A stretch of DNA of 64,000 bases. Origin: Sphaerodactylus townsendi (taxonomy: Eukaryota). Where the stretch lies: positions 682,001 to 746,000 of the forward strand of contig NW_025950352.1 of assembly GCF_021028975.2 (NCBI RefSeq), written 5' to 3'. Below are positions 22,442 through 60,810 of the stretch, piece by piece; within the stretch, counting starts at the first letter, position 1, and each line of letters starts with the position of its first letter. Position numbers and translations under genes: made by a program. Below the pieces are notes generated by a model. That model saw nothing but the letters and a program-made list of their open reading frames with translations. It was not told the DNA's origin and made no database searches.

Positions 22442-22590
22442 NNNNNNNNNNNNNNNNNNNNNNNNNNNNNNNNNNNNNNNNNNNNNNNNNNNNNNNNNNN
22501 NNNNNNNNNNNNNNNNNNNNNNNNNNNNNNNNNNNNNNNNNNNNNNNNNNNNNNNNNNNNNNNNNNNNNNNNNNNNNNNNNNNNNNNNNN
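22442..22590. other. Assembly gap (run of N)
   Basis: Continuous Ns. Confidence 1.
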
Positions 22591-36360: not shown

Positions 36361-40242
<3,882 letters not shown>

Positions 40243-41003
40243 CGCGCTGCAGTGGCCTCGGCTGACTGACCTCTGGTGCCGGAGCGGAGCTGCCTTTCTG
40301 CTCCAGGAATGAATGCGTAGGCCGCAGATGGGCGCGCGTGCCTCTCCAATGCTGTTTCTGTTATTTAACGTCTCCCCCTCCATGCAATCACCCATGAAGC
40401 CTTGGGAAGAGGACCTTGGGAGACGGGGGTGGCAGGCAGGCACCCAATAAACACATGTCTTCAACCAGACAGGCCTCTGTCTTGAAATCCAGCAGTGGGG
40501 GAGCTGTGGGTGGGAACTGTGGGGGCACACAGCCCAGGAGACGGTGACCTTCGCGTGCTCCCCCCCCCCCCCCAGTCCCAGAAAGGAGCTCAACCTCAGT
40601 CAGTATCTACATCTTTATTGAACGGGTTGTTCATGCTTCTGGCGCACAAATATACATCGTCAGCCTTCCCCTGACCACATTCAGCTCCCCACAGCTGTGC
40701 AGGGCCCTCGCTCAAGCCAGAGGCAGGGCTGTGGGTGTCAGTGTCTTTGGCAGGAGTTCAGGGAAGGGCAGGAGGGCGCCTGGGAGAGCCTCTACCCCCT
40801 TACCCCTTGTTGTAGAGTGCAATACCTTCCTTTGGAGGCAGATACAGCTGTCAGCAAGTTGTGGGGAAGAGATCAGCCTCCACCCACCCCCAGCTCCACA
40901 AGGATGATGCATTAGTCAGCCACTACAGGGTTAAAAGTTGTGCGGAGCCTCTGTCTTCAGCAAAGGCGGACCTCACAGTTCCTTGGTCTTTGCAGACAGG
41001 TGT

Positions 41004-44000
41004 TCAGTGGCAGTTCTGACAACTGGGGTGGCACCTCTGCCCATCTACGTTGCACCGGCAGCCTCCGCTGGTGTCACCAGGACCCTGCAAGAGGGGAGCA
41101 GAACAGAGGCCTCAGGGCCAGGCATGCCTTGCCCCCCCCCCGCTTTAACAGAGCCTGGCATGTGCAGAGAAAGGGGCTGTCTAATCCCAGGTTCTGCATC
41201 CTCGCCCTAAAAAGCTTTGCTAAGACCAGTCCAAAAACACAGGGCACAGCATGAGGTTCTGAGTTATCCAGAGTTCTCCATCAGGCAGGGGGTAAGAATG
41301 GAAGCCGATACCAGTTGCCTGCCGCCCCCCCCCCCCCCCCCCACCTTACTAGTGGCTTCTTGCTCCCAGCACAGCAGGGGCCCTGCCTGGTGGCCGTCCT
41401 GTGCCAGCACCGAATCCCAAAAAGCATTCTATACAAGATGGGAGCCCGAAAGGACCTCCCCTCCCTTTGCGATCACCCAGCCCCTGTGCGCTCTGGAGAC
41501 TGGGACAGCTTACATTCTGTGCTGTGTTTGGGGTGGGGGGTGGGGGTTCTTAAACGGTATCTCCCACCTTTCTCTTAACAAAAAAATGCCCAAGGCAGCT
41601 AACGTAGATAAAGCACCCTAATAAAATACAAAAATCAGCCTTATCCAGCAAGGAGTGAAACGAGGCCCAGTTGGAGTCTCTATAATTGAGAAGTGAGGAG
41701 GCTGGTGGAAACTGTTGGAACATGTGTAAATGTTTAGATGCGCAAAATCTAAATGACAGCTGTACTCCTAGCAGGTGCCGTGTGCAGATTAGGACTGAGT
41801 GCACAGCTTGTACCGTGTGCAAACCTGATAAGGTGAGGGCGCCTGATTGGTACCACTTTTGTATATAGTTAGCACAGTGTGATGGGTGCCTGAAAACACC
41901 TGTGGGGCTTTGGGGCTGGAAAACACCCGCCTTTGGGGCTGGGAATGAGCACCACTGCTGCCCCTCCCTTGCCTTGCAGACGAGGGGCAGTGGGGTGCTG
42001 CTGTCCAGGCACAAAGGCTGGAATTTGGCACCAAGGCAAAGTGACCCCTGGCAGCCATTTGGGGCCTCACTTTCCTTTTGCTTGTGAAGCAGGGAGGGCT
42101 GCTCTGGCAGGCCCCACACTTTCTTCCTCCTGAGCCTCACCAGGCGCCGGCTGGGCCCTTTCACGTTCACCGTGGCAATCACAGGGCTATAAACAAGGCC
42201 ATAAAAAGCCCAAGGACGGCCAGGCCAGTAGGAACCAGCATTCTCTGCTGACAGCTGCACAGCCCTGGAGTGTCCTCTCCAAGCAGAGGGGGCGGATATG
42301 AGCCAATTTCCTTCCTGGGGTTCTGGCTGTGAATTCCAACCAGCCCTTGGGTATCAGGCAGGCAGCCAGGTCTGCTTTACGCACCGGAGGTCCCTGCTCA
42401 GTCCCTGGCTAAAGGAGCAAGCAGTGGGTGGCTGGAAAGGCCTCAGCTGCTCAGAGCAGGCAAGACTGATGGCAACAGACCCCCCGTGAGGGGGGCGGGA
42501 GGAGGCACGGGGTCTACTAAGGCAGTTGCACAGAAGGAGAAATCAACACTCATGGCAAAAAAGTGAGAAACCAAGAGCCAACCAGGGAGAGGGCAAAATC
42601 GTACCCCCTGCCGTCTTCCCCAGTGGATACCGGTCAAAAGATGGCAGCCAGTTCTTGGTGCAGAGTGTCGCTTGCTGGGAGGGGAAGCACTTGGCCACCG
42701 ATCCATGGGCCTCCCTGTCCAGCCTGCTCCCCCTCCCCCCTTCCAGCCCCCCAAGCCCCGGTGTGCTCACTCCTGGCCCCCAGCGAGGTCCTTTGGTCAC
42801 CCAGCAGATCTCTGTCTGGCAGACGGAGCAACGGAGCCAGTCGCAGCCGCCCTTCTTCTGGACCACGATGCGGCACACGGGGCAGTGCATGGCCTCCCCC
42901 ACCTGCACCAGCATCTGGAAAGGGGGGAAGGAAAGAAACCGTGGCCAGCTTCGTGGGAGGCAGAGCCCAGCCACAACAGCTGGATCGCGCAGGTGCTGAG
43001 AAGAAGAAACTGTCACCAGAGACAAGAATTTGGAAAATGAAGCTTGCTGAGCAGAATTTCACCTGGCTTCCACAAGGGGAAATCCTGCCACACCCACCTT
43101 CTGGACTCCTCTGAAAACAGGAGCAAGCACGTAAACGTCACATACTTGGACTTTTAAAAAGATTTGGAAGAGTTTCCCCACCAAGGTAACGAAGGACACT
43201 TTTGCAGCCGAGGAAGGAGAGGACAGCTCCTCTTATGGATTAGAAATTAGTTAAATGACAGAGGCCAAGTCTGCAGATGACGCAAAAGCATTCAGGGGGG
43301 TGAATCCCAAGGTTTGTCGTGGAGAGCACCACCAGGAGGAGCTCCACAAATTGGGGGGAGGGGAGGAGGGCCCTAGAAGCTGAAATGACTAAACTAAGGA
43401 CAGTGTACATTGGTCACATGACAAGAAAACTGGAAAAGACAATAACGTTGGAAAAAGTTGAAGGCAGCAGGAAAAGAGGAAGCCCCAACATGAGATGGAC
43501 AGACTCTATAAAGGAAGCCACGGACCCCATTTTCCAAGGCCTGAGCCGGGTGGTTAACCGTAGGACCTTTTGGAGGACACTGATCCACGGGGTCCACTTA
43601 AGCTGGAAGAGACCTGACAGCATTTAACCTGCGCACCCAGATTCAGGGCGGACGAAAGGAACAACTTTACACAATGAGATCAGAATGTGGAACTGGCTGC
43701 TGGTGAACGTGGAGACGGCCACAGGCACAGGTGGCTTTAAAAGAGATCGGAAAGATGGGAGTGTTGTGGGGTTTCTGGGCTGTGTGGCCGTGTCCCAGTA
43801 GCATTTTCTCCTGACATTTCGCCTGCATCTGTGGCTGGCATCTTCAGAGGATCTGATGGTAGTAAAGCAAGCAGAGTACATATATTTGGGTGCTGTGTGG
43901 TTTCGGGGCTGTATGGCTGTGTTCTAGCAGCATTCTCTCCTGACGTTTGGCCTGCATCTGTGGCTGGCATCTTCAGAGGATCCTCTGAAGATGCCAGCCA

Positions 44001-47000
44001 CAGATCCTCTGAAGATGCCAGCCACAGATGCAGGTGAAATGTCAGGAGAGAATGCTACTGGGACACGGCCATGCAGCCCAGATGCCACACAGCACCCAAG
44101 TGATTCCAGCTGTGAAAGCCTTCGATAATACAGAGTATATATATCTGCGGGATGTCCAGGGTGGGAGAAAGAACCATTTGCATTGGTTAACAAGTGTAAA
44201 GGGTGCACTTAGCAAGTGTGATTTGCATGTGTTGAGGCAGGAAGCAATCAAACGGATTAAAATGCCAGGCAATGACTATGCAGACGCCCTCGCTAATTGA
44301 TTATATGCTAAAAGGGGTGGATTCCACTCAACACATGCAAATCACGCTTGCTAATTGCACCCTTTACAGTTGTTAACCAATGCAAATGGTTCTTCCTCCC
44401 ACCCTGGACATTCCACAGGTATATATACTCCACACCATCAGATCCTCTGAAGAGGCCAGCCACAGATGCAGGCGAAACATCGGGAGAAAATGCTACTGGA
44501 ACACGGCCACACAGCCCGGAAACCCCACAACACCCCAGTGATTCCAGCCGTGAAAGCCTTCAACAAGGCATTACACCGATTCATGAGGGCCATGTCTATC
44601 AGCAGCAACTAGCAAATTACAGTATCAAATTACAGTATCAAGAGGCAACCTCAGGGGCAGGTCAGCCTCTAGGCCCGTGGTGGCGAACCTTTGGCACTCC
44701 AGATGTTATGGACTACAATTCCCATCAGCCCCTGCCAGCATGGCCAATTGGCCATGCTGGCAGGGGCTGATGGGAATTGTAGTCCATAACATCTGGAGTG
44801 CCAAAGGTTCGCCACCACGGCTCTAGGCCCTGTTGCTGGTCCTCCAGAGGAACTGGTTGCCCACTGGATGACTGGGGATGCTGGCCCAGATGGACCCTCG
44901 CTTGTCTGAACCAGCCGGGGTCTTCTTGTGCCCCTGCCTGACCCGTGAGGACTGAAGAAGGGCCTCCTTCTGTACAAGCTTTGTCGCCTGGCGCTACAGA
45001 ATGGCCAACCAGGCCAGCCCCAGGGGCGGGGGGGGGGGGAGGAGTGAGCTGCAGCCGCAGACAAGCCCCATCCCACTCACCTTCAGCATGTCGCTGGTCT
45101 CCCGGGCGGCAGCATCATTCTGGGCCTGGTACTGCAGCTTGTCCTGGTATTCCTTGCAGTTCATGCCCTCGTGAATGGCCTGTGGGTGAGAAAAGGCGCT
45201 CAGTCCCTCCGGGCTCCCTCTTCCCACAACTGCCCCACTTTGTCTGGCAATGTCTGCAGTTCCAACTGGCGTCCCAAGAGCCTGGCAAGAGCCAAGGGCC
45301 TGTCCGGCCTGGTTCCGTGGAATGAGGATGTCAAGTGGGTTCGTACCCCTTTGGCAGGCGGGTGGCCCATATTTCTGAATACTCCCAAAGAGGAGAAAAG
45401 CAGGAAGGAGTGAGCTCAACCTATTCAGGTGCACTGCACACGTCTCATTTGCATTCCAAAAAGACTGTTGTCACTTGGAGCCTGAAGGGATCCGGTCCAC
45501 TCAATTCTGCCCTGAGGTGGCTGCCTTAATAACTGCAGATGGCCACTGCCCGGCCTGCTCTCCCCCTTCCCTGCCCCAGTGGTCTCTTTTCTCCACACCT
45601 GCATAACAGCAACCCCAGGGACTGATGGGAATTGTAGTCCATGAACATCTGGAGCGCCATAGGTTGGCCACCCTTGGGAAAGACTGAGGCCCAGAATGCC
45701 ACTGGCAGTCTAGGAGGTTGGACCATGGAATCACAGAGCTGGAGGAGACCCCCAAGGGCCATCCAGCCCAACCCCCTGCCATGCTGGAACACACAATCAA
45801 AGCACTCCCGACAGATGTTCATCCAGCCCGGTGGTTCTCAACCTGGGGGTCGGGACCCCTTTGGGGGTCGAACGACCCTCTCACAGGGGTCGCCCAAGAT
45901 TCTCTGCATCAGTGTTCTCCATCTGTAAAATGGATAGATGTTAGGGTTGGGGGTCACCACAACATGAGGAACTGTATTAAAGGGTCACGGCATTAGGAAG
46001 GTTGAGAACCACTGATCCAGCCTCTATTTAAAAGCCTCCAAAGAAGGAGACTCCACCACACTCCGAGGGAGTGCATCCCACAGTCAAACTGTCGGTCAGG
46101 AAGTTCCTCCTGATGTTTAGGTGGAACCTCTTTTCCTTCACCTTGAACCCATCACACCTGACCTAGTCTCTGAAGCAGCAGGAAACAAGCTAACAAGCTT
46201 GCTCCCTCTTTGACATGACATCCCTTCAAATATCTAAACAGGGATATCCTGTCACCTCTTAACCTATTAAGGAGCTACAGTGGCGTAGGAGGTTAAGAGC
46301 TCGTGTATCTAATCTGGAGGAACCGGGTTTGGTTCCCAGCTCTGCCGCCTGAGCTGTGGAGGCTTATCTGTGGATTTCAGATTAGCCTGTACACTCCCAC
46401 ACATGCCAGCTGGGTGACCTTGGGCTAGTCACAGTTCTTCTGAACTCTCTCAGCCCCACCCACCTCACAGGGTGTTTGTTGTGAGGGGGGAAGGGCAAGG
46501 AGATTGTCAGCCCCTTTGAGTCTCCTGCAGGAGAGAAAGGGGGGATATACATCCAAACTCCTCTTCTTCTTTTGCAAGACAGTTAGCCCAAGGGACAGAT
46601 GTCTTTGCAGTGACTGTGACCACAGCCAGAAGCACAGGTGGCTTTAAAAGGGGGTCAGATGGATTCATACAGAAGAGGACCATCACCTGCTACAGGAAAC
46701 CTCCCTATGCAGAGGCAGGCAACCTCTGAAATCCAGCGCCAGGAAGGATCCTGAGGGGCAGGACCCGTTTGTTGGCCTGCTGAGGCGGCTTTGGATGAGA
46801 CAGACCCGAAGCAGCAGGGCTGCGCTGGGGCTCTTCTGCAGGGTCTGCTGAGAGGTCGGAAGACAAGCGTGGCCCCCTGCTCTCCCCCACGGCTGGGCTG
46901 GCTCACCTTGCAGACCAGGCAGTTGAGTGCCCAGCAGATGGGGCAGCGGAAGTCGTTGACGTCATCCTCGTAGATGCACCAGCCCAGGCAGTCGGCCGTC

Positions 47001-50000
47001 TGGCAGTGGTAGCTGTTCTGGGCACGGCTCTCAGCCACCGCCAGCCTCCGCTCCAGGAAGCGCTCGTACTCCCCCTGGGACACCAGCTGCAGAGACGGGA
47101 GCGGCTTCAGAGTGCCCCCACCCCAGGAGGGCGGGGGGGGGCAGGAAGACACAGGCAGCTGTGAGGGGGGGTAGATGTGGGGCTTCCAAGTCCCCAAAGC
47201 CAGCAGGCTTTGCCGGGGGGGGGGGGGGGCAGGAAGAAAGGCTGCTCCGTGGTCCCTCCAGCAGCCAGTCAGCCTGCCAGCCTGTGTGCAGGGCACGGCT
47301 ACCCAAGTTGCAGAAGCGGCCACTCACCGCCCGGATCTCTCGATCCTGAAGGTGGCTGCTGCAGGCGTAGCTGTCGTCCCGGAAGGGGCAGCCCACTTGA
47401 GGCTCCTCGCTGCAGTTGACCAGCTGCCGCAGGCACTCCCTGGGGGAGGAGGAGGGAACATGCCACCGTCGGGCTTATGGCTGCCTGCCCTTCTCCCCCC
47501 ACCCCCTGTGCCTGCCCTTCTCCCCCCACTCCCCAGACGGCAGGTGCAGATTACCTGCAGAAGCTGTGCAGGCATTCACGCAGCAGCACGCCCTCTCCTG
47601 GCTCCACGTCAAGGTAGCAGATGCGGCACTCGGTTGCCTCTTGGGTGGGCACCAGGGCCTCTTCGTCCAGCTGGCACAGTTGCTGGAAGTTCTGCCTCCG
47701 TTCCTGCTCCAAAGCCTGTGTGGGAGCAGACAACGAGAGCGGAGCAACGGGCACCCTGGCGGACACACCTGCCGGGACAGCACTCGGCCCAAACCAGGCC
47801 ACGAACCTCCTTGACGCCTGATGATGGCGCAGAAGCTCCATCTGCAAACCTTTGGCAAGCAAAAGTCACCAAGCTCCCCCCGCCCCGCCCCTTCGGATTT
47901 CAGGGCCCTCAGTCAGCTTCCACAGCAGTGCCACGGAGCATGAATGGTGAATGAGGCCACGGAGCATCTCTGGGCAGGACCTACCACAGTTTGTGGCACC
48001 TCTAATTCAACTAAAGCAGGAGGAAGTAGCTGCAGGAGAGAGGACCGAGCCCCACAAGCTGAGCAGAGCGACGGGGAGGGGGTGGGGAAACCACCAACCA
48101 TTTTGTCCTGGAGGCCTTTCCCTAAGAACATAAGAACAAGCCAGCTGGATCAGACCAGGGTCCATCTAGTTCAGCACTCTGCTACTCGCAGTGGCCCACC
48201 AGGTGCCTTGGGGAGCTCACGTGCAGGAGGTGAAAGCAATGGCCTGCTGCTGCTGCTCCTGAGCACCTGGTCTGCTAAGGCATTTGCAACCTCAGATCAA
48301 GGAAGATCAAGATTGGTAGCCAGAGATTGGTAGACATCCCTCCCATCTCCTGGGCTGCTTCAAGGTCAGCCTCTCCAAGCAATAGTTGAGGTTCCCGATC
48401 TCTGCATGGCCGGAGTGGGGGGTGGGGGGGCTTGGCTTGCTCCTTGCCTCCTTTCTACCTCTCAGGGGAACCTCCCCCTCCTCACCTGCCCAAGGCTCCG
48501 TGTATGGCTGGGTCTTGCTACAGAGCTGTATAGCGATCAGGGTCAGCTCTTGGGAGACGCAGGCTCAAATACTTGCTCCACCGTGGATGCTCATTGGATG
48601 ACCTTGGGCCAATCACAGCTGCTCAGCATGACCTTCCTCGCAGGATGGTGGTTGTGAGGATAAAATGGAGGAGGGGAGGGCAAGGTCGCGTGGCACTGTG
48701 AGCCCATCACGTGGCAAGAGTTGGGCCGGGAGTTTGACTTTCAGCAAGGGCATCTTGACAGTGTTCAGGAAGCCTCCAAAGACAGGTCAGCTGCCCGTTC
48801 AGAAACGGCACTCATCCAAACAGCACCAACCCCCAACTGGGCAGAATCCGTACCTGCCTGCCCACCCATCGTCCCCTCCCCCATCTTGTAGAACAGCCCG
48901 CCTGGAAAGGTTAGGAAGCCCCCCACTCCTCTGGCTTTCTGCAAACAACGAACCACTGAATTACTCCACAGGGCCTTTCCGCAAAAGTAATAGGGCAGCA
49001 CTGCGCAAAACAATTCAAAAGGTCACTTGAATGAATGATTAGGGACTGGGGGTGTGTATAGTTTGGATCTCCTATGTCAGTGTTGGCGAACCTATGGCAT
49101 GGGTGCCAGAGGTGGCACTCAGAGCTTACTCTGTGGGCACGTGCAAACAGAGAGCCCCCATCTAGGCGGCTGGCTGGAGCCACTGGGCAAATCCAATTAC
49201 TAGCATTAAACCTAAGACCTAGTTTTGGGGAAGCAGTGTAGGTAACCCTGTTAAGCGCTGTTAAAACCCACTGATTTTCATGCAAAGAACAAAAGCGCAA
49301 TCCTTTACCTGGGAGTAAGCTTGGTTGCTGGCAATGGGGCTTGCTTCAGAGCAAACCCTCCTAGGGTCGTGATTCACACGTTGGAAGAGATGCATGGTTG
49401 CTTCAAAGCAAAGCCACCGACTACCTCCAAGCTTACTCCTGAGTAATGCACGCCTCGGAGCCAATTGTTTTTTCTAAGCAAAAACCTCAGTATTCAGGTT
49501 AAATTGCCGTGTTGACACTTTGCGATAAATAAGTGGGTTTTGGGTTGCAGTTTGGGCTGCACTCGGTCTCAGAAAGGTTCGCCATCACTGTCCCATGTAA
49601 TTTTGACTGTTCTGACTCACTCCGGATAATTTGCCTGGAGTTCCAGTGAGAAAGGTGGACTATAAATAAATCAAATAAATGTAAATAAGTAAGGCGGGGT
49701 TGATGGGAGTCACCTGCTCATCTTGAGCTGGGAGTAGAAGAGGCTCATGCTGGAGCCCTACTCACACACCCCCACACACACACACGCGCTGCCACCCCAA
49801 AGTACTTCCTCCCCCTCTGCCTGGCGCGCCACATGCAGACTTCTGCAAGACAGGGATGCTGTGAGAGGGAGAGTCCTTCTGCTTGGGGGCAGCCGTTGTC
49901 CAGAGCACAGCTGCTTATGCCAGCAAATGGAAACCACAAGGAGCCCACGGGGTTTGTGGCGGCTCTTCTTGCCTGTCACACAAGCCCCTTATTCGCTTCT

Positions 50001-53000
50001 TCAACCCCCGGCCTCCCCACAGCTGGATCTACCACCCTCCACGCAGCAGCCACAGGGGCAGAACCGTTTGGTCTTTGCTGGACTCCCCCATCAGGGAATA
50101 GGAAGGTCTCCCAACCTGAAGGCCTCAGCAGGGGAGAGCAGAAGCATCTGGGGGGGGCACTTTTTGCCAATTTGTCTGCTCTTGAGGCGTGGTGGAGACC
50201 CCCCCCCCCCTGCTGTTTCTGCCTATCCCACGAAGGGACATGCATAGCCGCTTGGGAAAGCCATTTCCTGGCAGCAGTTCTGCAATGACCCCCTGGGCCA
50301 GGTCCACTGCTGCTCGCCCCCTGGTGTGTTGATGAGCCAGTCTTGGGGTCAGGGGAGCAGCCTTCGCCCCCCCCCCCCTTCAGGGACTGTGCTGTTTTTC
50401 TCAGAAAAGGACGTCGGGGCCAAATGAGCGCCTGCTGAGAGCCACAAAGGGCAGGCCAAACACTTTGGCTCTGTGGCCAATTTTCACAGGACATGATTCC
50501 CAGGAGGACTCTTCAGTGGGAGCTGACCAAAGCACCCCCGCCCCCTGCCGAGGCAGGCGCTGAACAGCCAGGCAAGGACCACGCGGCAGCAGATAGCTGG
50601 CAAATTCCTTGGCAGAGAGAAAGCTCCCGCTTGAGGGAATCTGGCTACGGACCGGCATGAGGCACGGCCACAACTCTTCTGCACGCCTCTTAAGCGGAGT
50701 TAGAATCGGTCCAGCTTCTACACAGGGAAATCCTCCCTGTACGGCTAAGGGCGGACATTGGGTACTTGACCCAGACGTTCAAGACGGATACTGAGAAAGC
50801 TGGAAAGGGTCCAGACCAAAATGGTCAAAGGCAGGGGTTCCATCATGCCCCACGAGGAGAGACTTAGGGAGCTGGGAATGCAGAGAAGGTTAAGGGGTGA
50901 CATGACAGCCATATTTCAATATTTGAAGGGATGTCATGTTGAAGAGGGAGCCAGCTGGTTTCCTGCAGCTCCAGAGACCAGGACCAGGACCAATGGATGC
51001 ACACGACAGGAAAAGAGATTCCACCTGAACATTAGGAAGAACTTCCTGACGGTGAGGGCTGTTTGACAGGGGAATATGCTGCCTTGGAGAGTGATGAAGC
51101 CTCCTTTTTTGGAGGTTTTTAAACTGGACGGCTGCTTGTCAGGAGTGCTTCGACTGTGTCTTCCTGAATGGCGGGGGGTTGAACTCAATGGCCCTTGGGG
51201 TCTCTTTCAACCCTGTGATTCTACGAATCATATTGCTCCTTAGAGTCCAACAAGATCTTCAGCAGTTGTCGTAAGCCAAAACTCCCTTCATCAGATACAA
51301 ACAAGAGCCTTCCACTGAAGTCCAATGCTCCAAAAACCATCATTTACTTGCCTTCTAATGCACCAAACAGTCACAAATAAGCTTAGCAGTTGGGACTAAG
51401 GGGAGAGGTGCTCATGGGGTTGAAAAACTGTCCAAAGGGCAGCGAGGAGGTATAAACAGGTAGTTCTAGGAAACGGCACCCAGTTCAGCTAATCAGAAAC
51501 AGACGCAGACAAAAAGTGGTGCTTATTTACTCAAGGAGTCGTTCTACTGTCAAGTTCACAAATTCACCTTCAAAACGGGGCTAGACAAATTCCTGGCAAA
51601 GAGATCCATGAATGACCACTTGCCCCAGTTACCAAAGAAAGCCTCCCCACTCAGGCAGGATACCTCTGACACCTCATGCAAGGAGGGGGCCATCAGAGAA
51701 GAGGCTCGTCCTCTGCCCCCATTTCTCAGCCTTTCAGGGTAACTGGTGTGAAGCAGGAAGAGGAAGTAGAGGGGACAACACAGATCTGACCCAGCAGAGT
51801 TCTTCCGTCAGGCTCTCTTACAAGAAACATGAATTTCTGGTCCTGTCCCTGAAGCTGCGGGCAGGCCTGGGGGGCAGTCAATGGGTCACGCAAGAATTAG
51901 CACTGAGGGGTGGGGATCAGTGGGGGCAGCCCCTAGACAGGCAAAAAAGGTCTTCTGGAGGGTCAGTTCCTTCCTCCCGACAGCAGGGGAACGCTGACAC
52001 CCGGTTCTTTCCCAGCCTCACCTTCGCCCCACAAATCCAAACAGCTCCAGCACCAGGTTGGCCTTTCTGGCCCACAGGAATCATTTAATAGAATAAGGCA
52101 CTTGTGCTCCAAGTCTCTTCAAATATACAAACACTTCACAGAAATAAAACCCGTCTCAAAAGGGCCCTTGAAACTTCAACGTCAGACAGAACACAGTGCT
52201 CAGTGCAAGGGAAGGCCGGTGCCTCCCCCAGCGGGATTTGTTCGGTCAAACTCAGGCCCTCAGAGGTTCATGGCCTGCAATTCCCAGCAGCCCCTGCTAG
52301 CGTGGCCAATTGGCCCTGCTGGCACGGGCTGCTGATGGGAATCGTAGTCCAGGAACACCTGGAGGGCCTGAGTTTGACACCTATGGATGAACTGGGGGGT
52401 GGCTGCCCCAGAAGGGCAGATTTGCACCAGACCCCCAAAGGCACAGACCCATCCCCTGAGAAGCCAACTTCTCTCTGGTGCAGACAAAGTGCTTGATGCT
52501 CCTGCTCAGCAGCTCAGGAAGCGTCTGGGGGGTGGGGGGTGGGGAAGGATGCTGCCTGCTCCGACCGTCAGCAGAGCAAGTTCAGCCCCAGTGGTGGGTC
52601 GCACCGAGAGGCCTCTTTCCTTGCGCGTCTCCTCTCCACAGGGCGGGGAGCAGAGCCCGGGGCACGGACAGCCTGCTCCTCAGAGGGATCAGCACCGGCA
52701 GCTGGACAAGGTGCCCCAGCATGCAGCGGGCCGAGTTGCTTGCAACAGCAGGCATGTGATGGATCCTTCATGTGGCACTAGAAGGCAGCAGCACTGGAAG
52801 CCCGCCCACCCACCCTCCATGATCCAGGGCCAGAACCCCCCAAGAGCGCTGATCAAGCCAGCCCAGGAGCCAAACTGGAGCCTTTCTGTGCAAGAGGCCC
52901 CCCCCCCCTTTGCAAGGAGGCTTTGGTCGGCAGAACTGAGCCAGAAGGCAAAGATCCCAGGAGATACCAACCAGCCCCAAGCAGGGGGTGATGGGGGGTT

Positions 53001-56000
53001 GCAGCAAGGACCCCCAACCACTGGGGCATTGTCATCTAGAGACCACCACGGCCATGCAACCTGCTCGTGTCACCACAGAGGCCTCCAGCTCCCCTGCGCT
53101 TTCACGGGTGCCTCTTCCCACAAAACTGCCTCCCCCAGCCTGAACGATCCAGGCAGCTCCCCGGGCTCAGCAGGCAACAGCAACATTGAACAAGTGATTC
53201 TCAGAAGCAAAACAAGGAGTCAGAGAGCCTGCCAGCAGGAGGCGCCCTTTCCTCCCCCGGCCTGGCTCCTCTCCGCAGCCACAAACGTCTCCCAAGAGGT
53301 CCTGCCTGCGGGCCAGCTCAACTCAAGGCCCGGCTGCAAAACAGGAGCTCCGCTGCTCAGGGCTCCGGATGACAGCTAGGAGAACTCCGAGGACAGGTGG
53401 ATGAAGTCATCCAGGGACCCGGGGCCGTGGGCACAGGGCACAGCCAGACCGTCTTCTCTCCTTCCCTTTTCCTGCCACAAGAGAAAAAAGAAAGAAGAGA
53501 AGAGAGTCATTGGGGGCTAGGCTCACCTAAAGGGGTGAAGACATGGGGCGGGGGAGAGAACAGAAGAATTCTGAAGAAAATGGTCATCCCCCCAAACAAA
53601 GACTTTCCCTTATTTTTTCAAAGGAGGAAAGAAACATTTGGCAAGCGCCAGACAGCCAATAAAACGTCATTTCTATAAAAGTTCAGATTTGTCATTTAAA
53701 ACAAGGTTTATACCAGAATATGTAACGTTAAGACTTATTTAAGAATCTGACTCGCAAAATAACTTTTTGTATGCTGTGGACACACGTGTATTTTCAAGCA
53801 TGTATGTGCTGCTTAAACTAGATTACTTTTGTCTATAGCAGTGGTGGCGAACCTATGGCATGGATGCCAGAGGTGGCACTCAGAGCCCTCTCTGTGGGCA
53901 CGTACAGAGTGTTCCCCATCTAGGTTGGCCTGGGCCACTGGGCTCGATTATTAGCATTAAACCTAAGACCTAGTTTTGGGGAAGCAGTATAGGTAACCCT
54001 GTTAAGCGCTGTTAAACCCCACTGATTTTCATGCAAAGAACAAAAGCGCGATCCTTTACCTGGGAGTAAGCTCGGTTGCTGGCAATGGGGCTTGCTTCTG
54101 AGTAAACCCTCCTAGGGTATTGAGTAAACCCTCCTAGGGTATTGAATCACCCATTGGAAGAGTTGTATGGTTGCTTCAAAGCAAAGCCACCGATTACCAC
54201 CAAGCTTATTCCTGAGTAACGCGTGCCTCAGAGCCAACCGTTTTTTCTAAACTAAAACCTCAGTATTCAGGTCAGTGTTGCGCCAACTGCACTGGCTTCC
54301 AGTAGAGTTCCGGATCGTTTTCAAGGTGTTGGTGCTGACCTTTAAGGCCTTACGCGGCCTGGGACCCTCGTATCTTCGAGACCGCATCACCCCATATGTT
54401 CCCACACGGCCTCTTCGTTCCGTAGAGGCCAATTTGCTAGTGGTTCCCGGCCCCTCGATGATGCGGCTGGCCTCCACACGGGCCAGGGCCTTCACAGCCC
54501 TGGCCCCGGCCTGGTGGAACGCTCTTCCACCAGCTATCCGGGCCCTGCGGGACCTTGGTGAGTTCCGCAGGGCCTGCAAGACAGAGCTGTTCCGCCGGGC
54601 CTTTGGAGAGACCAGCCGCTGATGGTGCCCCCCCCCTCTCTTTGGCCCTACACCTGGGCCTTTAACATCTATCAAGATCTGCCGTTCCTCTCTAGAGGGA
54701 AGAATTTAATATTAGGTATCGGGCACCACCTATACCTATATATATCTATGCTTTTATTCATTTTACATTTTATATGTTAATATACATGTTTATATGTTAA
54801 TATGTAGCTAGTTTCGCTGCTTTTATAAGTTTTAGCCTATTTATGATATTTTATGACTGTATCCACTGTGTGCTGTGCGCCGCCCAGAGCCCTTCGGGGA
54901 CGGGGCGGGATAGAAATTTAAAGTATAAAATAAAATAAATAAATAAATTGCTGCGTTGGCACTTTGTGATAAATAAGTGGGTTTTGGGTTGCAATTTGGG
55001 TACTCGGTCTCGAAAAGGTTCGCCATCACTGGTCTATAGTGTGCTATCTGAACAAGACGCTACTGCGTCATGTAACACACCCAGCGCTTCAAAGCTGCAG
55101 AGCTCCAAATAAGCTGTGATCCTGAGGTGATCCTGTGACCCTGACTCCTGAGGTGGCGCACCACATGCGGGGTCTCTTGGTTGGGTTTTGGGAGAGAGGG
55201 CAGGGCAGCGATTGTGGGGGTGGGGGGAAAGGATTCAAATTATATTTTGTATCCTGAGGAAACTACTGTCCGCTCTGGACAGCTTCCGAACTGAGGAGGG
55301 AAAACTCTCGGTTGTTTGTTCTCGAAGAAAACCGGGCCTCCTCTTCGGGGTGCTCGTCCTCCTAGCCAGACTCCTCCTCTGAGAAGAGTTCTCTCTCTTC
55401 CCTGAGGTCGTATTCGCCCTCGGAATCTGAGGAGGGCACTCTCTGAGGACTGGTGTGCCTGCACTTTTGGGCCGCCTTAATGGGCCAGGCTGCATCCCCA
55501 CCCCAAAGGAGTTGCATGTGGCTGGATCCGCAGCTGCTAAGGGGCTTGTGGCCCTCACGGGGGTGAGGCGTGGAGACATATCCATTAACCCCAGCCCTGG
55601 TAAGCTCTGCCCAAAGAGAACGTTCACCTGCTTCTTGAGGACTTCCTTAACAAAGACACGGAAGTCTGGTGGCCGAGGGGGGAGGGGGGACTGGGGGCGG
55701 GCACATTTCCCAATTGGGAATCCTGCTGAGAGGCACAGGGATTGATCAATTCCTCTGGCATGTTGCCAGAGCAGCTGGGAACTCCGGCTGCATTTCGGCA
55801 CGGTGTTGTTCTCGCTTTCATGGCTTAGGGAGCAATTTGGCCACTGTGTTCTTTGCCATTGGGACACCCTTCGTCAGCAGGGCTGCTCAGAAGACCGTGG
55901 ACATGCTGACGAAGGCTTCCAGGGGCCAGTTCCCCATATTCTTGGAGAGGAGGTTGGAGTTGGAGCCCCACCACATCTTAAGAGGCTGGGGAGGTGCCCC

Positions 56001-59000
56001 ACCACCTGTAAGGCTCCCGGGAGAGGAAGCTGTAAAGATCAGAGAAGAGGGGCCAGCAATCCCGGCAAGGGGTAGGTTGGAGGAATTAGAGTAAGGAGAG
56101 AGGGGAAGGAGACAAAAGAGGAACAAATGCACAAAAGAGGCAGGGTGGAGCAGGTAATCAGAAGCATGCTACTCCCCTTGGAGGCAGGAATCACACTGGA
56201 GCAAAGGAGAAGGGGTCCCTCTCCATAGGGAGAGGAAGAAATTTCATTTCCTGCCTCCCCAATGGGAACCATCCACAAGATGTCCTCTAGCTCAAGGGAG
56301 AACTACAGCATTTCCACTTTCAAACCCCATAAACGACTACCAAATAACGCCACTTAGACACTGAAGTATAAGTAGTGCATTTCAGGTAACTAAAGCAGTA
56401 AAATAAATTTCGTCTCACTAAACTGGTTTCCCCAACATGTAACTCCAAATACTTCAAACACAGTTTTCCTTCCCATAGCTTCAAAATCTACAGACGTTTT
56501 ACGCCTCTTGGCTCACCCTGGCCCACCTTCACTTGGCCAAGCCAGGGCCCCTTTAACTCCGCAGCACCTTGTTTCTGCCACGGCCACCCCAGTACTGCTC
56601 CACTCAAGCCGGCACCACCTCCCTTAAGTGCGGCACAGCCCAAGCGCGGAAACCTTGGGGGCCTAGGCCCCCCCACGGCCATCAATTGGGAAGGCACATT
56701 TGCACTCCACTTCGTGCCTGTGGGTTTCTTCCCAGGGCTTCAGCATAGTTATTACCCGGCTACTGTGGGAGACACCCTGAGTAAGCCCCCTACGGCCTGC
56801 CACTTCCCTCCAGAAAGGGGTAGGGGTCCCTGTTGCAAATAATCTCACTTCTTGCATTCTTTTATTCCTTCTCCACCAATAACTCACAACCCAGCCTGAA
56901 CACGCACACACAAAACAAGACGCACAACCTCACAGGTGAGGAACAGATCATAAAGATGAAGATCACGCTGAAGGGCAGCTGTTGCCCACTAAGCATCCAG
57001 CCAGACCTTGCCAAGACCACAGAACATTCCGCGGGGATTCCCTCACTCAGGCAGCAACTGGGATTCTCCCACAGAGTTTTTGAGCGGAGAAAAAGCGGCA
57101 TCTTTACCTGCTGGTACCGCAAGATTCCTTCTTTCTCCTGCTGCATCCGCCGCAGCTCCACGTCATCTGGTCTGTAGCTGCCAGGAACCACGTAAGCAGC
57201 AGGCCGGTCAGTGCTGCACATTTCACAGCCAGGGCGGGTGGGCTTGTTGATGAATGTGCAGGTGGGGCACGACCACCCAGCCTGCAAGACAAGCAGAGGA
57301 CCCTGGCTGAGCGGCCGCTCCGTGCCCTGGAGCCCCCCCCTTCACCTACAGTCCCCCCCAGGATTGAGGCGCATCTCCCACAGGGGACAGAGGGTCCTAC
57401 CTGGGTGGGGGAAGGGGGGGCAACCTCTGGAGGGGCTCGAGTGTGGCTGGGAAGGAAGTTGGAGAGCTGCAGCGCAGACAGCCTCTCCTCGAGATCCACC
57501 TTCTTGCTTCCATGCGATGCACCTGCTGGTGAAAAATGCACCAGGGAGAAACGTTACCTCCTCGCAGGGAGACAGAGGAGGAGGCTGGCAACCGGCTGAT
57601 GCAAGCGTAGGGCCACCCACCTGTCTTTGGCAGAGGGCTGGAGGATGGCTGCCCAACATTAGAGCCGTCCAAGAGCGAAGGTGGGGCTGGCTGCAGCAGC
57701 ACCCAATCTCTGTCCTCTTTGTAGCGCTGCTCTGAGAGCTTCGCAACCTTGGCCGAAAGCAAGTAGAGAAAGGCCGTGTCTCCATCCTTGCAGATCCCGT
57801 AGGAGCCCACAGTCCGGTCGTCCACACAGAGACACTGGCCGATAATCCAGCGCTGGACGCTAGGGTGAAAGCCATACTCCTGAAAGACCTTCGAAAGGGC
57901 AGAAAAGGAACTAATTAGTCCAAGTTACCAGTCCCTCCGTTATGACCTCTGAAGCTCTCTGGACCCCTCCCTGACAGGGAACACCTTTGGGGTGAGAGAG
58001 CAAAAGGCAGAGCAGATTCTCTGGGCTCCTCTTTCTGCCCCTTCCCTGCCCCCCCCCCCCCGGGGCCACTCGCTACCTTCTGTCGGAGAGCAGCAACGGT
58101 GGTATACGTGTGGACCCGAATGGTGATGTTTGCTGAGCACGTAGCATCTTCCACGCCCACCTTCATGCTGCAGGGAAGGGACACGGTGAGCCAGATGACA
58201 AGGGGAGAAAAGCCACACCATCAGATGGCCCTGTCACCCTCAGGGGAAGCTGGCCCAGCCACTGGCTCCACGCGGGCACACAGACCTGATCTCGCTCGTG
58301 GGGTAGCAAGACTCCTTCAGCAGGACACGCAGAGCAGCCTGCTGCTGAGCCAATGCTGTGGCACAGCGCACAGCCTCTTCCTGGTTCCCGAGCCCAATAG
58401 CCACAGACAGCTGGAACGCCAGGTCTTCTGCGGAGAGAAGGACACATAGACAAGCAGGGGCTGACCAGTCTTCTTACTCTCCAAGCTGCCCGCGTCCCCC
58501 TCGCAGGGAAGCTTCAAGCAGTCACAACATTCCCCTCCCGCCTCAAAAATCTGGCTGAACCAAACAATTCTGCAGGCTTCTCGTCACCATGCAGGACTGC
58601 GTTCCCCGAGCCCATTTCTACAAGCTCCAATGACATCTGCAGCAATGCATTCTCCTCACTCGCTCCCCTTGGCACAGACCAACAATCTCTCAGAGAGCCA
58701 CCCCTGTCTCCCACCTCAGAGTGGTCAGAGGAAAGGTCCCAACCCACTGATGCCCTCATCCCTGAGGACTGGGCAGACTTTGTAGCCAAGGAAGCAAATC
58801 TGAGTAGCTGAGCACTATTTTCTTTCAAGCACGACGACTATGGCAAAATGTCCAGGCTGCACAACCAAGGTCTTTCCTAGTAAGTTTTGCTATTGTCCGT
58901 CCTCCAACGCTACTTGTCCACTGAAACAGTTGGAGCAAGCCAGATTTCTTGCAGCCTCCAGTGGCCCCTTTCCCAGTCCTGCCAGCCACCAACCTTTCAT

Positions 59001-60810
59001 AGCCAGCTCCAAGGGCAGAGACGTCTCTGGCTCTGATGCAGGCAGAGAATTCGTAGCAGCTGAGTGATGGAGATGAGATCTTCCAGTCATCACGTGCGGG
59101 CTCTCGGCAGCTGGGGGAGAGACAGGGAGGACGTCAGAGACCCAGAGACTTGTCCCAGAGCTGCCCTGAAAGCCCGACACGGACTGCAAAGCAATGGCAG
59201 AGTGCAGGGAATGAATCAGTATTCCCTGGGGAACATTTGCTCCAACTCTTACTGGCAGCTGCATCAAGAAGAGGCTTCTGGAAGCCTAGAACGCCACCCT
59301 GGAAAGTCAACAAACCTCTAGACAGCGATCTAGGCATTATAGATCTTTAACAATGCACACTGCCCTTAAGAAGTGGGAGGGGCAGCAGATAATAAAGGGC
59401 TGTGAGATCCGACAGCAACTATTCACGTACTGTTATTTACTGTGTTATTTAAACACGGAATGGTTACCACCGCTGTGGGAGCGCCTGTGCACAGGACTCG
59501 CGCGTATGCACTGGGCGCTGCCAGCAAGTACAGGGCCAAAGCCTTGGCACAACAGGATGGGCACATCTTGCGTCCTGCCAGCCAACCCATTTGGAAGGGC
59601 TCCAGGACTGGTACAAGCCAAGCCTTCAACGCACACAGTCTGAGGCCATTCTCCACAATGCACAGAAGAAGTTTATCAGCACCTCCGACTCTCCCGTTCT
59701 CTCAGGCTGATGCTCACAGAGGCCTCATTTGCAGTTCTAATGGGGCCATGTTCTATCACCCACAGGTGTGAGCATCTGGCCTCCTGGCTGCAAATACAGC
59801 TGTGCTTGGCATGAGCAGCCGGCCGGCCATCTCCTCTCTGACCCAACGCCTGCCCTCTTGCCAGCGCCTTCCTGGGCAGCAGCTGACCTTTCTGGACTTC
59901 CCGAAGGGAGCTGCTGACGACTGCCCACCATTCATGCGCCTCATGGTCATCCTCGAAGTGGAAGACAATGGGGTCGTCTGGGCGAGCCAAGACTTTCAGC
60001 TCGTGGCACGTGGGAGTCTTCCTCTCGTAGGAAACCTCTCTGAGGCTGTACTCCACCAGGCTCTGGGGGCAGGAGAAGGCCGTTGAGGGGCTGCACGAGA
60101 ACAAGCTGCCCCAACCCGCCTGAACGATGACAGCCCGCATCGACCAACCCCCCCGCCCCCCCGAACACGCTGCTAAAAAGTGCCCCCCGCCAACCTGACT
60201 GGCCGGCAGCCCCTCCCTCCCGCCACACAGAGCAAAGCGACCCGGCAGGATGAGTGCCCGACCAGGCTCCTTGTAGGGGGGAGCAGGGAGACCCGCCCCG
60301 CAGCACTGCTGCTGCCGCTGCGTCGGGGCCTCCCCCCCCCATCTGTCCCCCACCCCCTCGGGTGGGAAACACGAAGCTCCTCGACAGGGGAGGAAGCCCG
60401 AGGCCAGCGACGCACGGCGACCCCCCCCATCTTGCCCTGGGGGTCGGTGGGGGAGGGAGGACGCGAGCAGAGACCCCCCTCCCTCCCTCCCTCCCTCCCT
60501 CCCCCCCAGAGCCGCCCCATCGTCGGGCAGGAGGCAGCAGGCCCAGGCGCCCCCCCCTCCCCGCAGGGTCTCCGCTCCCCGCCACTGTCCGGCGCTCCCC
60601 CCTCCCGCTCCTCACCGCTTCGGGCCCCGAGTCCGGCCCGCCCCTCAAGCCGATGCGGAAGCGGTCCTGGTCGGGCGCGGCGCTGAGTTGCAGCCGAAGG
60701 AGGCGCCGCCCTGCGCGGCCCGGGAGAGGGAGCGGGGAGGGCCGCGGCACCCAGGCCCGCGCCGACGCCAGCACCGCCGAGCCCGCGCCCCCCGACGCCG
60801 CCGACGCCAT
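41004..60810 (-). CDS. SHARPIN: SHARPIN-locus gene with HOIL-1L/RBCK1-like RBR: PH-LTM-UBL-NZF-RING1-IBR-RING2 (~669 aa, 14 exons)
   Basis: Exons 60616-60810, 59888-60062 (PH fold, [14 protein letters not shown]), 58994-59059, 58286-58427 (LTM), 58077-58167 and 57621-57888 ([19 protein letters not shown]), 57401-57522, 57108-57281 ([23 protein letters not shown]), 47555-47715 and 47328-47439 (RING1), 46907-47086 (IBR), 45081-45179, 42771-42914 (RING2, [11 protein letters not shown]), 41004-41084 (GDTSGGCRC...CHPSCQNCH*). Exons sum to 2010 nt, in frame. Minus-strand AATAAA at 40614-40619. Position tail-to-tail with CYC1 matches SHARPIN synteny. Confidence 0.92.
43372..43630 (+). mobile_element. 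RTE/BovB-like LINE 3' end
   Basis: [50 protein letters not shown]. Confidence 0.75.
43758..44565. mobile_element. Cluster of Penelope-like terminal repeats in both orientations with hammerhead-ribozyme cores
   Basis: Four copies of TCCT-CTGAAGA-TGCC..GGC-GAAA(C/T)GTC-AGGA-like unit plus GTGAAAGCCTTCGACAA-like end. Inverted arms at ~44135-44235 and ~44325-44430. Confidence 0.7.
44675..44820. mobile_element. Palindromic hAT MITE, perfect 146-bp palindrome
   Basis: Two 73-bp arms centred on CCAATTGG; 8-bp TSD CTCTAGGC. Related copies or halves at ~510-590, 22040-22110, 24720-24780, 28105-28220, 31988-32075, 45620-45675, 52250-52385, 61215-61281. Confidence 0.9.
45722..46265 (-). mobile_element. 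CR1 3' fragment (second subfamily) interrupted by SPIN
   Basis: Reverse-complement similarity to 50890-51225 on both sides of 45829-46014. Confidence 0.7.
45829..46014 (+). mobile_element. SPIN (Space Invader) hAT non-autonomous element
   Basis: TIRs C(G/A)GTGGTTCTCAACCT and perfect 8-bp TSD ATCCAGCC. Internal sequences GACCCCTTTGGGGGTCGAACGACCC and CACCACAACATGAGGAACTGTATTAAAGGGTC match the SPIN/URR1 ends as I recall them. Confidence 0.85.
46271..46570 (+). mobile_element. SINE, full length
   Basis: Same family as 33081-33400. Confidence 0.8.
48123..48322 (-). mobile_element. CR1 3' fragment
   Basis: Same 3'UTR and tail as 6218-6420. Confidence 0.8.
49078..49590 (+). mobile_element. hAT non-autonomous element (~510 bp)
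   Basis: TIRs CAGTGTTGGCGAACCT / AGGTTCGCCATCACTG; TSD TCCTATGT/TCCCATGT. Confidence 0.85.
50780..51225 (+). mobile_element. CR1 LINE 3' fragment (second subfamily)
   Basis: Peptide EERLRELG...[16 protein letters not shown]...[15 protein letters not shown]. Confidence 0.8.
53376..53471 (-). CDS. Candidate alternative terminal exon of the SHARPIN-locus gene ([31 protein letters not shown])
   Basis: Long pyrimidine tract followed by TTGTGGCAG acceptor ending at 53472. Phase 0 matches the exon 8 donor; TAG at 53376-53378. Downstream ATTAAA (minus strand) at 52084-52089. Confidence 0.55.
   Translation of the reverse strand, partial: EKGRREDGLAVPCAHGPGSLDDFIHLSSEFS
53839..55031 (+). mobile_element. 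Same hAT element with nested LINE insertion
   Basis: Perfect TSD GTCTATAG; colinear with 49078-49590 except for an insert at ~54273-54944. Confidence 0.85.
54273..54944 (+). mobile_element. L2-clade LINE 3' fragment
   Basis: [36 protein letters not shown]2 C-terminus, open for 115 codons; (TAAA)n tail. Confidence 0.85.

What the first reader, a model, noticed from the sequence alone, without database searches (positions are those of the whole stretch)
41004..60810. SHARPIN-locus gene encodes a complete HOIL-1L-like RBR ligase: a potential extra catalytic LUBAC subunit
Seen in sequence: 14 phase-consistent exons give PH-LTM-UBL-NZF followed by RING1-IBR-RING2. The catalytic Cys context (KKGGCDW; human HOIL-1L KKDGCDW) and the atypical C-terminal zinc tail ending CHPSCQNCH are intact. 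Established: mammalian SHARPIN, next to CYC1, ends just after the NZF and is non-catalytic, while HOIL-1L has the RBR but no PH domain. Inference: this reptile keeps the ancestral SHARPIN/RBCK1 architecture. Its LUBAC could therefore contain a third active RBR with HOIL-1-type ester/glycan ubiquitylation, lost in mammals. Similar SHARPIN-RBCK1-related models are annotated in some non-mammalian vertebrates, so the architecture is probably not wholly new, but I know of little functional work on it.
Basis: partly seen in the sequence, partly recalled or inferred. Interest (0 to 1): 0.8.

Follow-up and report, generated by a model that had tools for sequence, protein, structure and literature searches.

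The report
Gecko SHARPIN gene keeps RBR ligase
The gecko counterpart of mammalian SHARPIN still carries a complete, well-conserved HOIL-1-type ubiquitin-ligase module that mammals lost; the gene model is already in RefSeq for this genome and over 100 other species, but I found no functional study of it.

Summary
On the minus strand, 60810-41004, 14 exons with AG/GT borders and consistent phases give a 686/687-aa open frame: Sharpin_PH, LTM, UBL, NZF, RING1, IBR, RING2. The catalytic Cys, the Zn2/Cys6 spacing and the C-terminal His of HOIL-1 are all present. GPAA1 and CYC1 lie next to it, as at human SHARPIN.

It is not new as an annotation. The DNA is identical to a Sphaerodactylus townsendi assembly record, where RefSeq calls it "sharpin isoform X1". 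More than 100 such models exist from sharks to birds.

Trees show two old paralogue clades, SHARPIN-locus (PH+RBR) and canonical RBCK1 (no PH). Both occur in squamates, a turtle, a salamander, gar and sharks. So the RBR is ancestral and mammals lost it.

Intron 8 holds a conserved alternative last exon (53471-53376) that gives a mammalian-type short isoform.

No RNA run of this species exists. Spliced contigs from four relatives join exons 9-13 at my borders, and their differences are mostly synonymous. The exon 8-9 joint, ligase activity and LUBAC membership remain inferred.

The scan has not noted this on other DNA.

The parts
60616..60810 (-). Exon 1: ATG at 60810, N-terminal half of the Sharpin PH domain, in a GC-rich (0.65) promoter region
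   Evidence: Sharpin_PH 19 bits, profile 3-59
59888..60062 (-). Exon 2: C-terminal half of the Sharpin PH domain
   Evidence: Sharpin_PH 70.8 bits; Sharpin 4EMO, E=0.015
58994..59110 (-). Exon 3: low-complexity linker, phase 1 to 1
58286..58427 (-). Exon 4: LTM (LUBAC tethering motif)
   Evidence: PF25393, 65.7 bits, full length 1-42
58077..58167 (-). Exon 5: first part of the UBL
   Evidence: UBL shown through the identical protein P0127 (Sharpin UBL 5X0W 98.1 bits, HOIL-1L UBL 4DBG 71.8)
57621..57888 (-). Exon 6: rest of the UBL plus linker
57401..57525 (-). Exon 7: linker. Tandem CAGCAG acceptor: RefSeq uses 57525 (687 aa), my model uses 57522 (686 aa)
57108..57281 (-). Exon 8: NZF plus helical tail, ends ...YQQ in phase 0. 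This is the branch point between the two isoforms
   Evidence: (78 bits to HOIL-1 NZF 3B08)
53376..53471 (-). Alternative last exon in intron 8: 31 codons (EKGRRED...[13 protein letters not shown]) plus stop, strong polypyrimidine tract, phase 0. ATTAAA at 52089. Gives a short isoform of about 459 aa without RBR
   Evidence: a Logan mRNA contig of another species carries the whole short CDS
47555..47715 (-). Exon 9: helix plus first half of RING1
   Evidence: spliced contigs of relatives
47328..47439 (-). Exon 10: second half of RING1
   Evidence: (joint 47554/47438)
46907..47086 (-). Exon 11: RING1-IBR helix and IBR
   Evidence: IBR; joint 47328/47086
45081..45179 (-). Exon 12: end of IBR and IBR-RING2 helix
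   Evidence: (joint 46906/45178)
42771..42914 (-). Exon 13: RING2 first zinc site. Catalytic Cys codon at 42845-42843 (Cys636/637), followed by D-W. Also the Glu and the first Cys of the Zn2/Cys6 cluster
   Evidence: (joint 45081/42914)
41004..41084 (-). Exon 14: rest of the Zn2/Cys6 cluster (C-x-C-x6-C-x3-C-x2-C), C-terminal His codon 41009-41007, stop 41006-41004. AATAAA at 40619

Best explanation
This is the SHARPIN orthologue of the gecko Sphaerodactylus townsendi. Shown: it is one 14-exon open reading frame next to CYC1 and GPAA1. Its N-terminal half is SHARPIN-type: PH, LTM, UBL, NZF. Its C-terminal half is a complete HOIL-1-type RING1-IBR-RING2. It belongs to a gnathostome-wide clade that is the sister of canonical RBCK1, so the RBR is ancestral and was lost in mammals. 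Intron 8 holds a conserved alternative terminal exon, so the gene can also encode a short, mammalian-like adaptor. Inferred: both isoforms enter LUBAC through LTM and UBL, as mammalian SHARPIN does. The long isoform would work like HOIL-1. RING1 binds E2~Ub, ubiquitin passes to Cys636/637 in KKGGCDW, and the C-terminal His helps transfer it to hydroxyl or amine acceptors. This would give the complex a further HOIL-1-type catalytic centre whose presence depends on 3' exon choice.
For: Exon structure and frame. Domains per exon. PDB matches. Key HOIL-1 residues as defined in PMC9834252: catalytic Cys, Trp two residues after it, Glu, C-x19-C-x-C-x6-C-x3-C-x2-C, terminal His. All are present with exact spacing across the exon 13/14 joint. 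Synteny. Identity with the RefSeq model. Over 100 PH+RBR models from sharks to birds. Canonical RBCK1 coexists in Rhineura, Podarcis, Pelusios, Ambystoma, gar and sharks. In the trees the SHARPIN-locus clade has SH-aLRT 97 on the whole protein and 96 on the RBR alone. Spliced contigs of four relatives join exons 9 to 13 at exactly my borders and carry 29 nt upstream of exon 9 that do not match the intron. Of the 29 listed exon differences, 24 are synonymous third-position changes (p=6e-8), including TGC>TGT at the catalytic Cys. Short-isoform tail conserved from teleosts to birds and present in mRNA contigs.
Against: No RNA run of this species is on record, so the exon 8 to exon 9 joint is not seen directly here. 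In the relatives the contigs stop 29 nt upstream of exon 9 and the letters were not shown. Every Logan transcript-derived protein of this clade that I retrieved is the short isoform, so the long isoform may be the minor one. Two annotations model the RBR exons apart from the SHARPIN part (Crotalus adamanteus P0196, Gekko japonicus P0316). Human His469 is Gln here; its role is unknown to me. A canonical RBCK1 in this gecko, ligase activity and HOIP binding were not tested.
Confidence: 0.8

Rival explanations
1. The RBR exons (47715-41004) are a separate transcription unit, an 'RBCK1-like' gene with its own promoter and first exon in intron 8. Gene predictors fuse them to SHARPIN only because the phases fit.
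For: The Crotalus adamanteus annotation splits the locus into 'sharpin' (460 aa) and 'RBCK1-like' (492 aa). A Gekko japonicus RefSeq model (292 aa) starts with a different 33-aa exon spliced to exon 9. All Logan transcript proteins found are short isoforms.
Against: Exon 9 has no start codon before RING1 and begins in phase 0, exactly matching the end of exon 8. The alternative first exons of the split models have no match in the window. In three relatives the contig carries exactly 29 nt upstream of exon 9. That is what a 31-mer assembly graph gives when the upstream exon is shared with another path whose next base is also G, as for exon 8 going to the alternative exon or to the intron (inference). 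More than 100 independent models join them.
Confidence: 0.07
2. The long isoform is made, but its RBR is not an active ligase. It would serve only as a scaffold or as an allosteric ubiquitin-binding module.
For: No activity data exist. One position differs from human (His469 to Gln). In mammalian LUBAC, SHARPIN works without any catalytic domain (established knowledge).
Against: Every residue shown to be needed for HOIL-1 catalysis is kept: the catalytic Cys, the Zn2/Cys6 ligands and the terminal His. They have been kept across about 450 My in this clade, with branch lengths as short as in canonical RBCK1. Changes are mostly synonymous.
Confidence: 0.12
3. In this gecko the gene is not an extra subunit but the only HOIL-1 equivalent. 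Canonical RBCK1 would be absent, and one gene would supply both the SHARPIN and the HOIL-1 roles by alternative splicing.
For: No canonical RBCK1 of any gecko (or bird) appeared among the 115 hits. The scan has no note of RBCK1 in this genome so far.
Against: Canonical RBCK1 is present in two other squamates, a turtle, a salamander, a marsupial, gar and sharks. The search is limited by shared words and by length, so absence from it means little.
Confidence: 0.1

Closest known systems
Mammalian SHARPIN (LUBAC adaptor subunit)
   Same: Same locus next to CYC1 and GPAA1. Sharpin_PH domain, LTM, UBL and NZF in the same order. The LTM-UBL scores higher against Sharpin than against HOIL-1L (127.8 against 97.2 bits). 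The short isoform of about 459 aa has the same architecture.
   Different: The long isoform continues from the NZF exon into six more exons that encode a full RBR. The short isoform ends in a conserved 31-residue tail (…[13 protein letters not shown]). From memory, mammalian SHARPIN lacks that tail.
HOIL-1/HOIL-1L (RBCK1), RBR E3 ligase of LUBAC
   Same: LTM-UBL-NZF-RING1-IBR-RING2 order. The RBR scores 402 bits against human HOIL-1 8EAZ over 279 residues. It has the catalytic Cys in KKxGCDW, the Trp in place of the usual His, the Glu, the Zn2/Cys6 binuclear cluster spacing and the C-terminal His. The NZF with helical tail scores 78 bits.
   Different: It is a paralogue, not the orthologue. 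It falls in the sister clade. A true squamate RBCK1 scores 476 bits on the RBR and 172 bits on the LTM-UBL against HOIL-1. This gene has an N-terminal PH domain, and its RBR is optional through an alternative last exon.
RefSeq/UniProt models 'sharpin', 'RBCK1-like' and 'sharpin and rbck1 related' (shrprbck1r) of non-mammalian vertebrates
   Same: Identical architecture. The S. townsendi model 'sharpin isoform X1' is this very gene.
   Different: Nothing structural. Names are inconsistent: 'sharpin' in sauropsids, 'RBCK1' or 'RBCK1-like' in fishes and amphibians. I found no functional paper; the symbol shrprbck1r occurs in one paper of the library and not in its main text.

Membership tests
SHARPIN orthologue | N-terminal Sharpin-type PH domain | tested here: met
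   Pfam PF16764 on exon 2 (70.8 bits) and exon 1 (19 bits). Sharpin PH 4EMO at 38.5 bits for the identical protein.
SHARPIN orthologue | LTM followed by a UBL that is closer to SHARPIN than to HOIL-1L | tested here: met
   LTM at 65.7 bits. 5Y3T Sharpin 127.8 against HOIL-1L 97.2 bits; UBL 98.1 against 71.8 bits. The pattern is reversed in a true RBCK1.
SHARPIN orthologue | NZF after the UBL | tested here: met
   PF00641 at 34.8 bits on exon 8.
SHARPIN orthologue | Conserved synteny: convergent with CYC1, with GPAA1 beyond it | tested here: met
   Cytochrom_C1 at 38600-39390(+) and Gaa1 at 28960-33837(+). The same genes are called in the assembly record. The human gene order is from memory.
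SHARPIN orthologue | Groups with mammalian SHARPIN in a tree | not tested
   No mammalian SHARPIN sequence could be retrieved as a usable id. The trees hold only PH+RBR proteins, canonical RBCK1 and invertebrate outgroups.
SHARPIN orthologue | Binds the HOIP UBA and the HOIL-1L LTM within LUBAC | not testable with these tools
HOIL-1-type RBR ligase (works like) | RING1 (C3HC4), IBR and RING2 in order, with all zinc ligands | tested here: met
   Residue-by-residue alignment to human HOIL-1 8EAZ, 402 bits. Pfam RING and IBR on single exons.
HOIL-1-type RBR ligase (works like) | Catalytic Cys (human C460) with Trp at +2 and the Glu (E471) | tested here: met
   The motifs GGCDW and TEIC in exon 13. 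Residue roles taken from PMC9834252.
HOIL-1-type RBR ligase (works like) | Zn2/Cys6 binuclear cluster C-x19-C-x-C-x6-C-x3-C-x2-C and C-terminal His (H510) | tested here: met
   Exact spacing across the exon 13/14 joint, and the protein ends ...CQNCH.
HOIL-1-type RBR ligase (works like) | Thioester intermediate and ester or glycan ubiquitylation | not testable with these tools
   This needs biochemistry.
RBCK1 orthologue | Falls in the clade of canonical RBCK1 (no PH; HOIL-1L-type LTM-UBL) | tested here: not met
   It falls in the sister clade with SH-aLRT 97 (whole protein) and 96 (RBR only). It also has lower PDB scores than the true squamate RBCK1 P0271.

The most novel reading that the evidence does not exclude
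In all non-mammalian jawed vertebrates, SHARPIN would be a switchable subunit. The choice between a conserved terminal exon in intron 8 and the six RBR exons decides whether LUBAC receives a passive adaptor or a second HOIL-1-type ester-forming ligase, making three RBR centres together with HOIP and RBCK1. Mammalian SHARPIN would then be the relic left after the RBR exons were lost.
Probability: 0.5. Interest if true: 0.6.

Novelty: already known. Interest (0 to 1): 0.45.

Why it matters
LUBAC biology rests almost wholly on mouse and human, where SHARPIN is a non-catalytic adaptor and HOIL-1 is the only ester-forming RBR. The data here show that the mammalian state is derived. The SHARPIN lineage kept an intact HOIL-1-type RBR under purifying selection for about 450 million years, alongside canonical RBCK1, and paired it with a conserved alternative exon that removes it. 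This explains why SHARPIN and HOIL-1L look alike. It also gives chicken, Xenopus and zebrafish as systems to ask what a second HOIL-1-type ligase does in the complex. As a sequence finding it is ordinary, because the model is already in RefSeq. Its value is as a pointer to an unstudied function.

Tried and rejected
- RNA evidence in this species: none on record. The single read-laying run was therefore spent on four small runs of relatives. It could not cover exons 8 and 9 together, because they lie 9.4 kb apart and the limit is 6 kb.
- Candidates for canonical RBCK1 that turned out to be truncated models of the same SHARPIN-locus gene: P0147 Terrapene, and P0207 and P0211 bird 'HOIL1, partial'.
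- The ESM Atlas search of the RBR without PH clusters gave only generic RBR clusters.
- Five literature searches found no paper on a SHARPIN with an RBR. The fifth served only to find the HOIL-1 structure papers.
- Exact look-ups of P0271 and P0095 returned nothing.
- The upstream LTM-UBL-NZF copy (61282-64000) was first considered as a second SHARPIN gene. I rejected that: it is riddled with 1-4 nt indels and no gene is called there.
- Joined-model step left out. All database searches used single exons by reference, or the database's own identical protein P0127. The joined 686-aa model was sent to no search tool. Exons were concatenated only inside local scripts, to check frame and stops and to classify variants.
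- No complex prediction was sent, and no binding is claimed as shown.
Full report
**Observation**

The gene lies on the minus strand. I rebuilt it from the sequence, guided by tblastn of database homologues. The borders were checked in a script.

There are fourteen exons from the ATG at 60810 to the stop at 41006-41004. Every internal border is AG/GT, the phases are consistent, and the total is 2061 nt with no internal stop.

Searched exon by exon by reference:
- Pfam finds Sharpin_PH (exons 1-2), LTM (exon 4), the RanBP-type NZF (exon 8), and RING and IBR (exons 9, 11, 13).
- The NZF exon scores 78 bits to the HOIL-1 NZF structures.
- The RING2 exon scores 84 bits to human HOIL-1, with KKGGCDW against KKDGCDW.
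- The PH exon weakly hits the Sharpin PH structure 4EMO.

**Identity of the locus**

GPAA1 (Gaa1, 28960-33837, +) and CYC1 (Cytochrom_C1, 38600-39390, +) lie just downstream and converge on the gene. From memory, human 8q24.3 has the same order: GPAA1, CYC1, SHARPIN.

The gene DNA is letter-for-letter identical to GCA_021028975.2 JAHVXK020000019.1:713004-752810. That is an assembly of the gecko Sphaerodactylus townsendi. Its RefSeq protein 'sharpin isoform X1' (P0127, 687 aa) matches every exon translation at 100%. The only difference from my model is the choice within a CAGCAG tandem acceptor at exon 7 (57525 against 57522).

So the 14-exon model is already public for this very genome.

**How widespread it is**

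A search seeded with the PH exon, and then searches with full-length relatives, returned more than 100 clusters of 600-750-aa proteins with Sharpin_PH + LTM + UBL + NZF + RING/IBR. They are named 'sharpin' in birds, lizards, snakes and turtles. They are named 'RBCK1' or 'RBCK1-like' in amphibians, coelacanth, ray-finned fishes and sharks.

**Relation to RBCK1**

A length-restricted search on the NZF-RING1 region finally brought in canonical RBCK1 proteins of about 500-520 aa without PH. They come from Rhineura and Podarcis (squamates), Pelusios (turtle), Ambystoma, a marsupial, gar, cod and several sharks. In most of these species, or in close relatives, the PH+RBR gene was also found.

PDB scores separate the two genes cleanly:

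| Protein | LTM-UBL vs Sharpin (5Y3T) | LTM-UBL vs HOIL-1L (5Y3T) | RBR vs human HOIL-1 |
|---|---|---|---|
| Gecko protein P0127 | 127.8 bits | 97.2 bits | 402 bits |
| Rhineura RBCK1 P0271 | 96 bits | 172.4 bits | 476 bits |

Maximum-likelihood trees of 37 proteins give two clades, each holding cartilaginous fishes, ray-fins and tetrapods:
- On the whole protein, the SHARPIN-locus clade has SH-aLRT 97 and the RBCK1 clade 91.
- On the last 262 residues (RBR only), the values are 96 and 64.

Three invertebrate RBCK1-like proteins served as a long-branched outgroup. P0127 stood in for the window's joined model, which I did not use.

The RBR of the SHARPIN-locus gene is therefore old and vertically inherited, not a recent fusion. 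Mammals are the lineage that lost it.

Mammalian SHARPIN itself could not be placed in the tree, because no usable sequence id was retrievable. Orthology to it rests on synteny, the PH domain and the PDB scores.

**Catalytic features**

PMC9834252 defines the unusual HOIL-1 active site:
- C460, with W462 where other RBRs have His;
- E471;
- a Zn2/Cys6 cluster with spacing C-x19-C-x-C-x6-C-x3-C-x2-C;
- the very C-terminal H510, needed for transfer to substrate.

The alignment to 8EAZ and the exon translations show all of these. The x19 spacing is preserved across the exon 13/14 joint. All RING1, IBR and first RING2 zinc ligands are kept. The catalytic Cys codon is at 42845-42843. One difference is Gln at human His469, and the paper assigns no role to that residue.

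By sequence, the gene meets every testable criterion of a HOIL-1-type RBR.

**Expression and selection**

No RNA run of this species is on record; the holders of the stretch look like DNA. I laid contigs of four small runs of four coded organisms on 42600-47900.

In all four runs, contigs skip the introns at my borders and are 89-93% identical in the exons. Two or more of these four joints are seen in each run:

| Joint | Places (from/to) |
|---|---|
| Exon 9/10 | 47554/47438 |
| Exon 10/11 | 47328/47086 |
| Exon 11/12 | 46906/45178 |
| Exon 12/13 | 45081/42914 |

The contigs are therefore spliced RNA of the orthologous gene, and the RBR exons are transcribed and correctly spliced in relatives.

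Of the 29 exon differences listed, 24 are synonymous third-position changes (binomial p=6e-8 against one third). One of them is TGC>TGT at the catalytic Cys. Only the best-supported differences were printed.

In three runs the contig carries exactly 29 nt upstream of exon 9 that do not match the intron. With 31-mer assembly, that is the length expected when the upstream sequence is shared with another path whose next base is also G. Exon 8 followed by the alternative exon, or by the intron, fits this. It is an inference: the letters were not shown, and exon 8 was outside the 6-kb limit.

**Two isoforms**

Many annotated proteins of 460-500 aa, and five or more Logan transcript-derived proteins, end after the NZF tail with a conserved EKGRRE...[12 protein letters not shown][SC]. 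The window encodes this tail at 53471-53376. It follows a strong polypyrimidine tract and an AG, in phase 0 after exon 8, with ATTAAA at 52089.

A 1690-nt Logan contig of another species carries a whole short CDS in one piece, so it is mRNA.

This agrees with the scan's separate note s1-743303. The gene thus offers a mammalian-type adaptor and an RBR-bearing form. Every transcript-derived protein I retrieved for this clade is the short form, so the long one may be the minor product.

**Mechanism**

Shown: the architecture, the residues, the conservation, the paralogy and the splicing of RBR exons in relatives.

Inferred: LTM and UBL place both isoforms in LUBAC as in mammals (5Y3T). The long isoform acts like HOIL-1. 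RING1 recruits E2~Ub, ubiquitin passes to Cys636/637, and the terminal His helps transfer to Ser/Thr or sugar hydroxyls.

Whether this is a third RBR, or in geckos the only HOIL-1-like one, depends on a canonical RBCK1 in this genome. That was not testable here, although two other squamates have one.

**Novelty and score**

The sequence feature is already annotated, here and in more than 100 species, so I class it as already known.

Five literature searches found no functional or evolutionary treatment. The nomenclature symbol shrprbck1r occurs in one paper of the library but not in its main text.

Interest is moderate. LUBAC specialists working in mammals would likely find an intact, conserved RBR in SHARPIN noteworthy, and it is directly testable. 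The finding adds no new sequence knowledge.

The joined spliced model was not sent to any search tool. Searches used single exons by reference, or the database's own identical protein.

Noticed in passing
window 61282-64000 (continues to the equivalent of 66103 in L001:4708-9529): There is a head-to-tail tandem copy (period about 5.3 kb) of the gene's 5' part, from the ATG to 1.2 kb into intron 8. It is 83% identical but has 481 gap positions in 5091 columns. The copied exons 4-8 each carry 7-20 indels of 1-4 nt and keep their AG/GT. No gene is called there. Indels outnumbering substitutions looks like unpolished long-read sequence, meaning a false duplication in the assembly, rather than an old pseudogene. 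This could not be settled without reads.
   Followed up: partly
window 57522-57527: Exon 7 has a CAGCAG tandem (NAGNAG) acceptor. RefSeq uses the upstream AG, which adds one Ala and gives 687 aa. The downstream AG gives 686 aa.
   Followed up: yes
window 44547-46670: Intronic repeats attract very high contig depth in all four runs laid (up to about 1.3e5 at 46317-46493). There are many repeat-to-repeat joints and loose ends. These are high-copy interspersed elements shared among the relatives.
   Followed up: no
proteins P0067, P0196, P0316, P0006 (other species): Several public models of this gene are faulty or split. Pelodiscus isoform X2 skips exon 10 and reads the IBR exons out of frame. 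The Phrynocephalus model ends in the wrong frame of the NZF exon. Crotalus adamanteus and Gekko japonicus annotate the RBR exons as a separate 'RBCK1-like' gene with unrelated first exons.
   Followed up: partly
one search hit list (other species): No canonical, PH-less RBCK1 of any bird or gecko appeared among the hits. The bird 'HOIL1 protein, partial' entries all map to the SHARPIN-locus gene.
   Followed up: no
window 22442-22590: A run of 149 N (assembly gap or masked stretch) lies between the left part of the window and GPAA1. I left it untouched.
   Followed up: no
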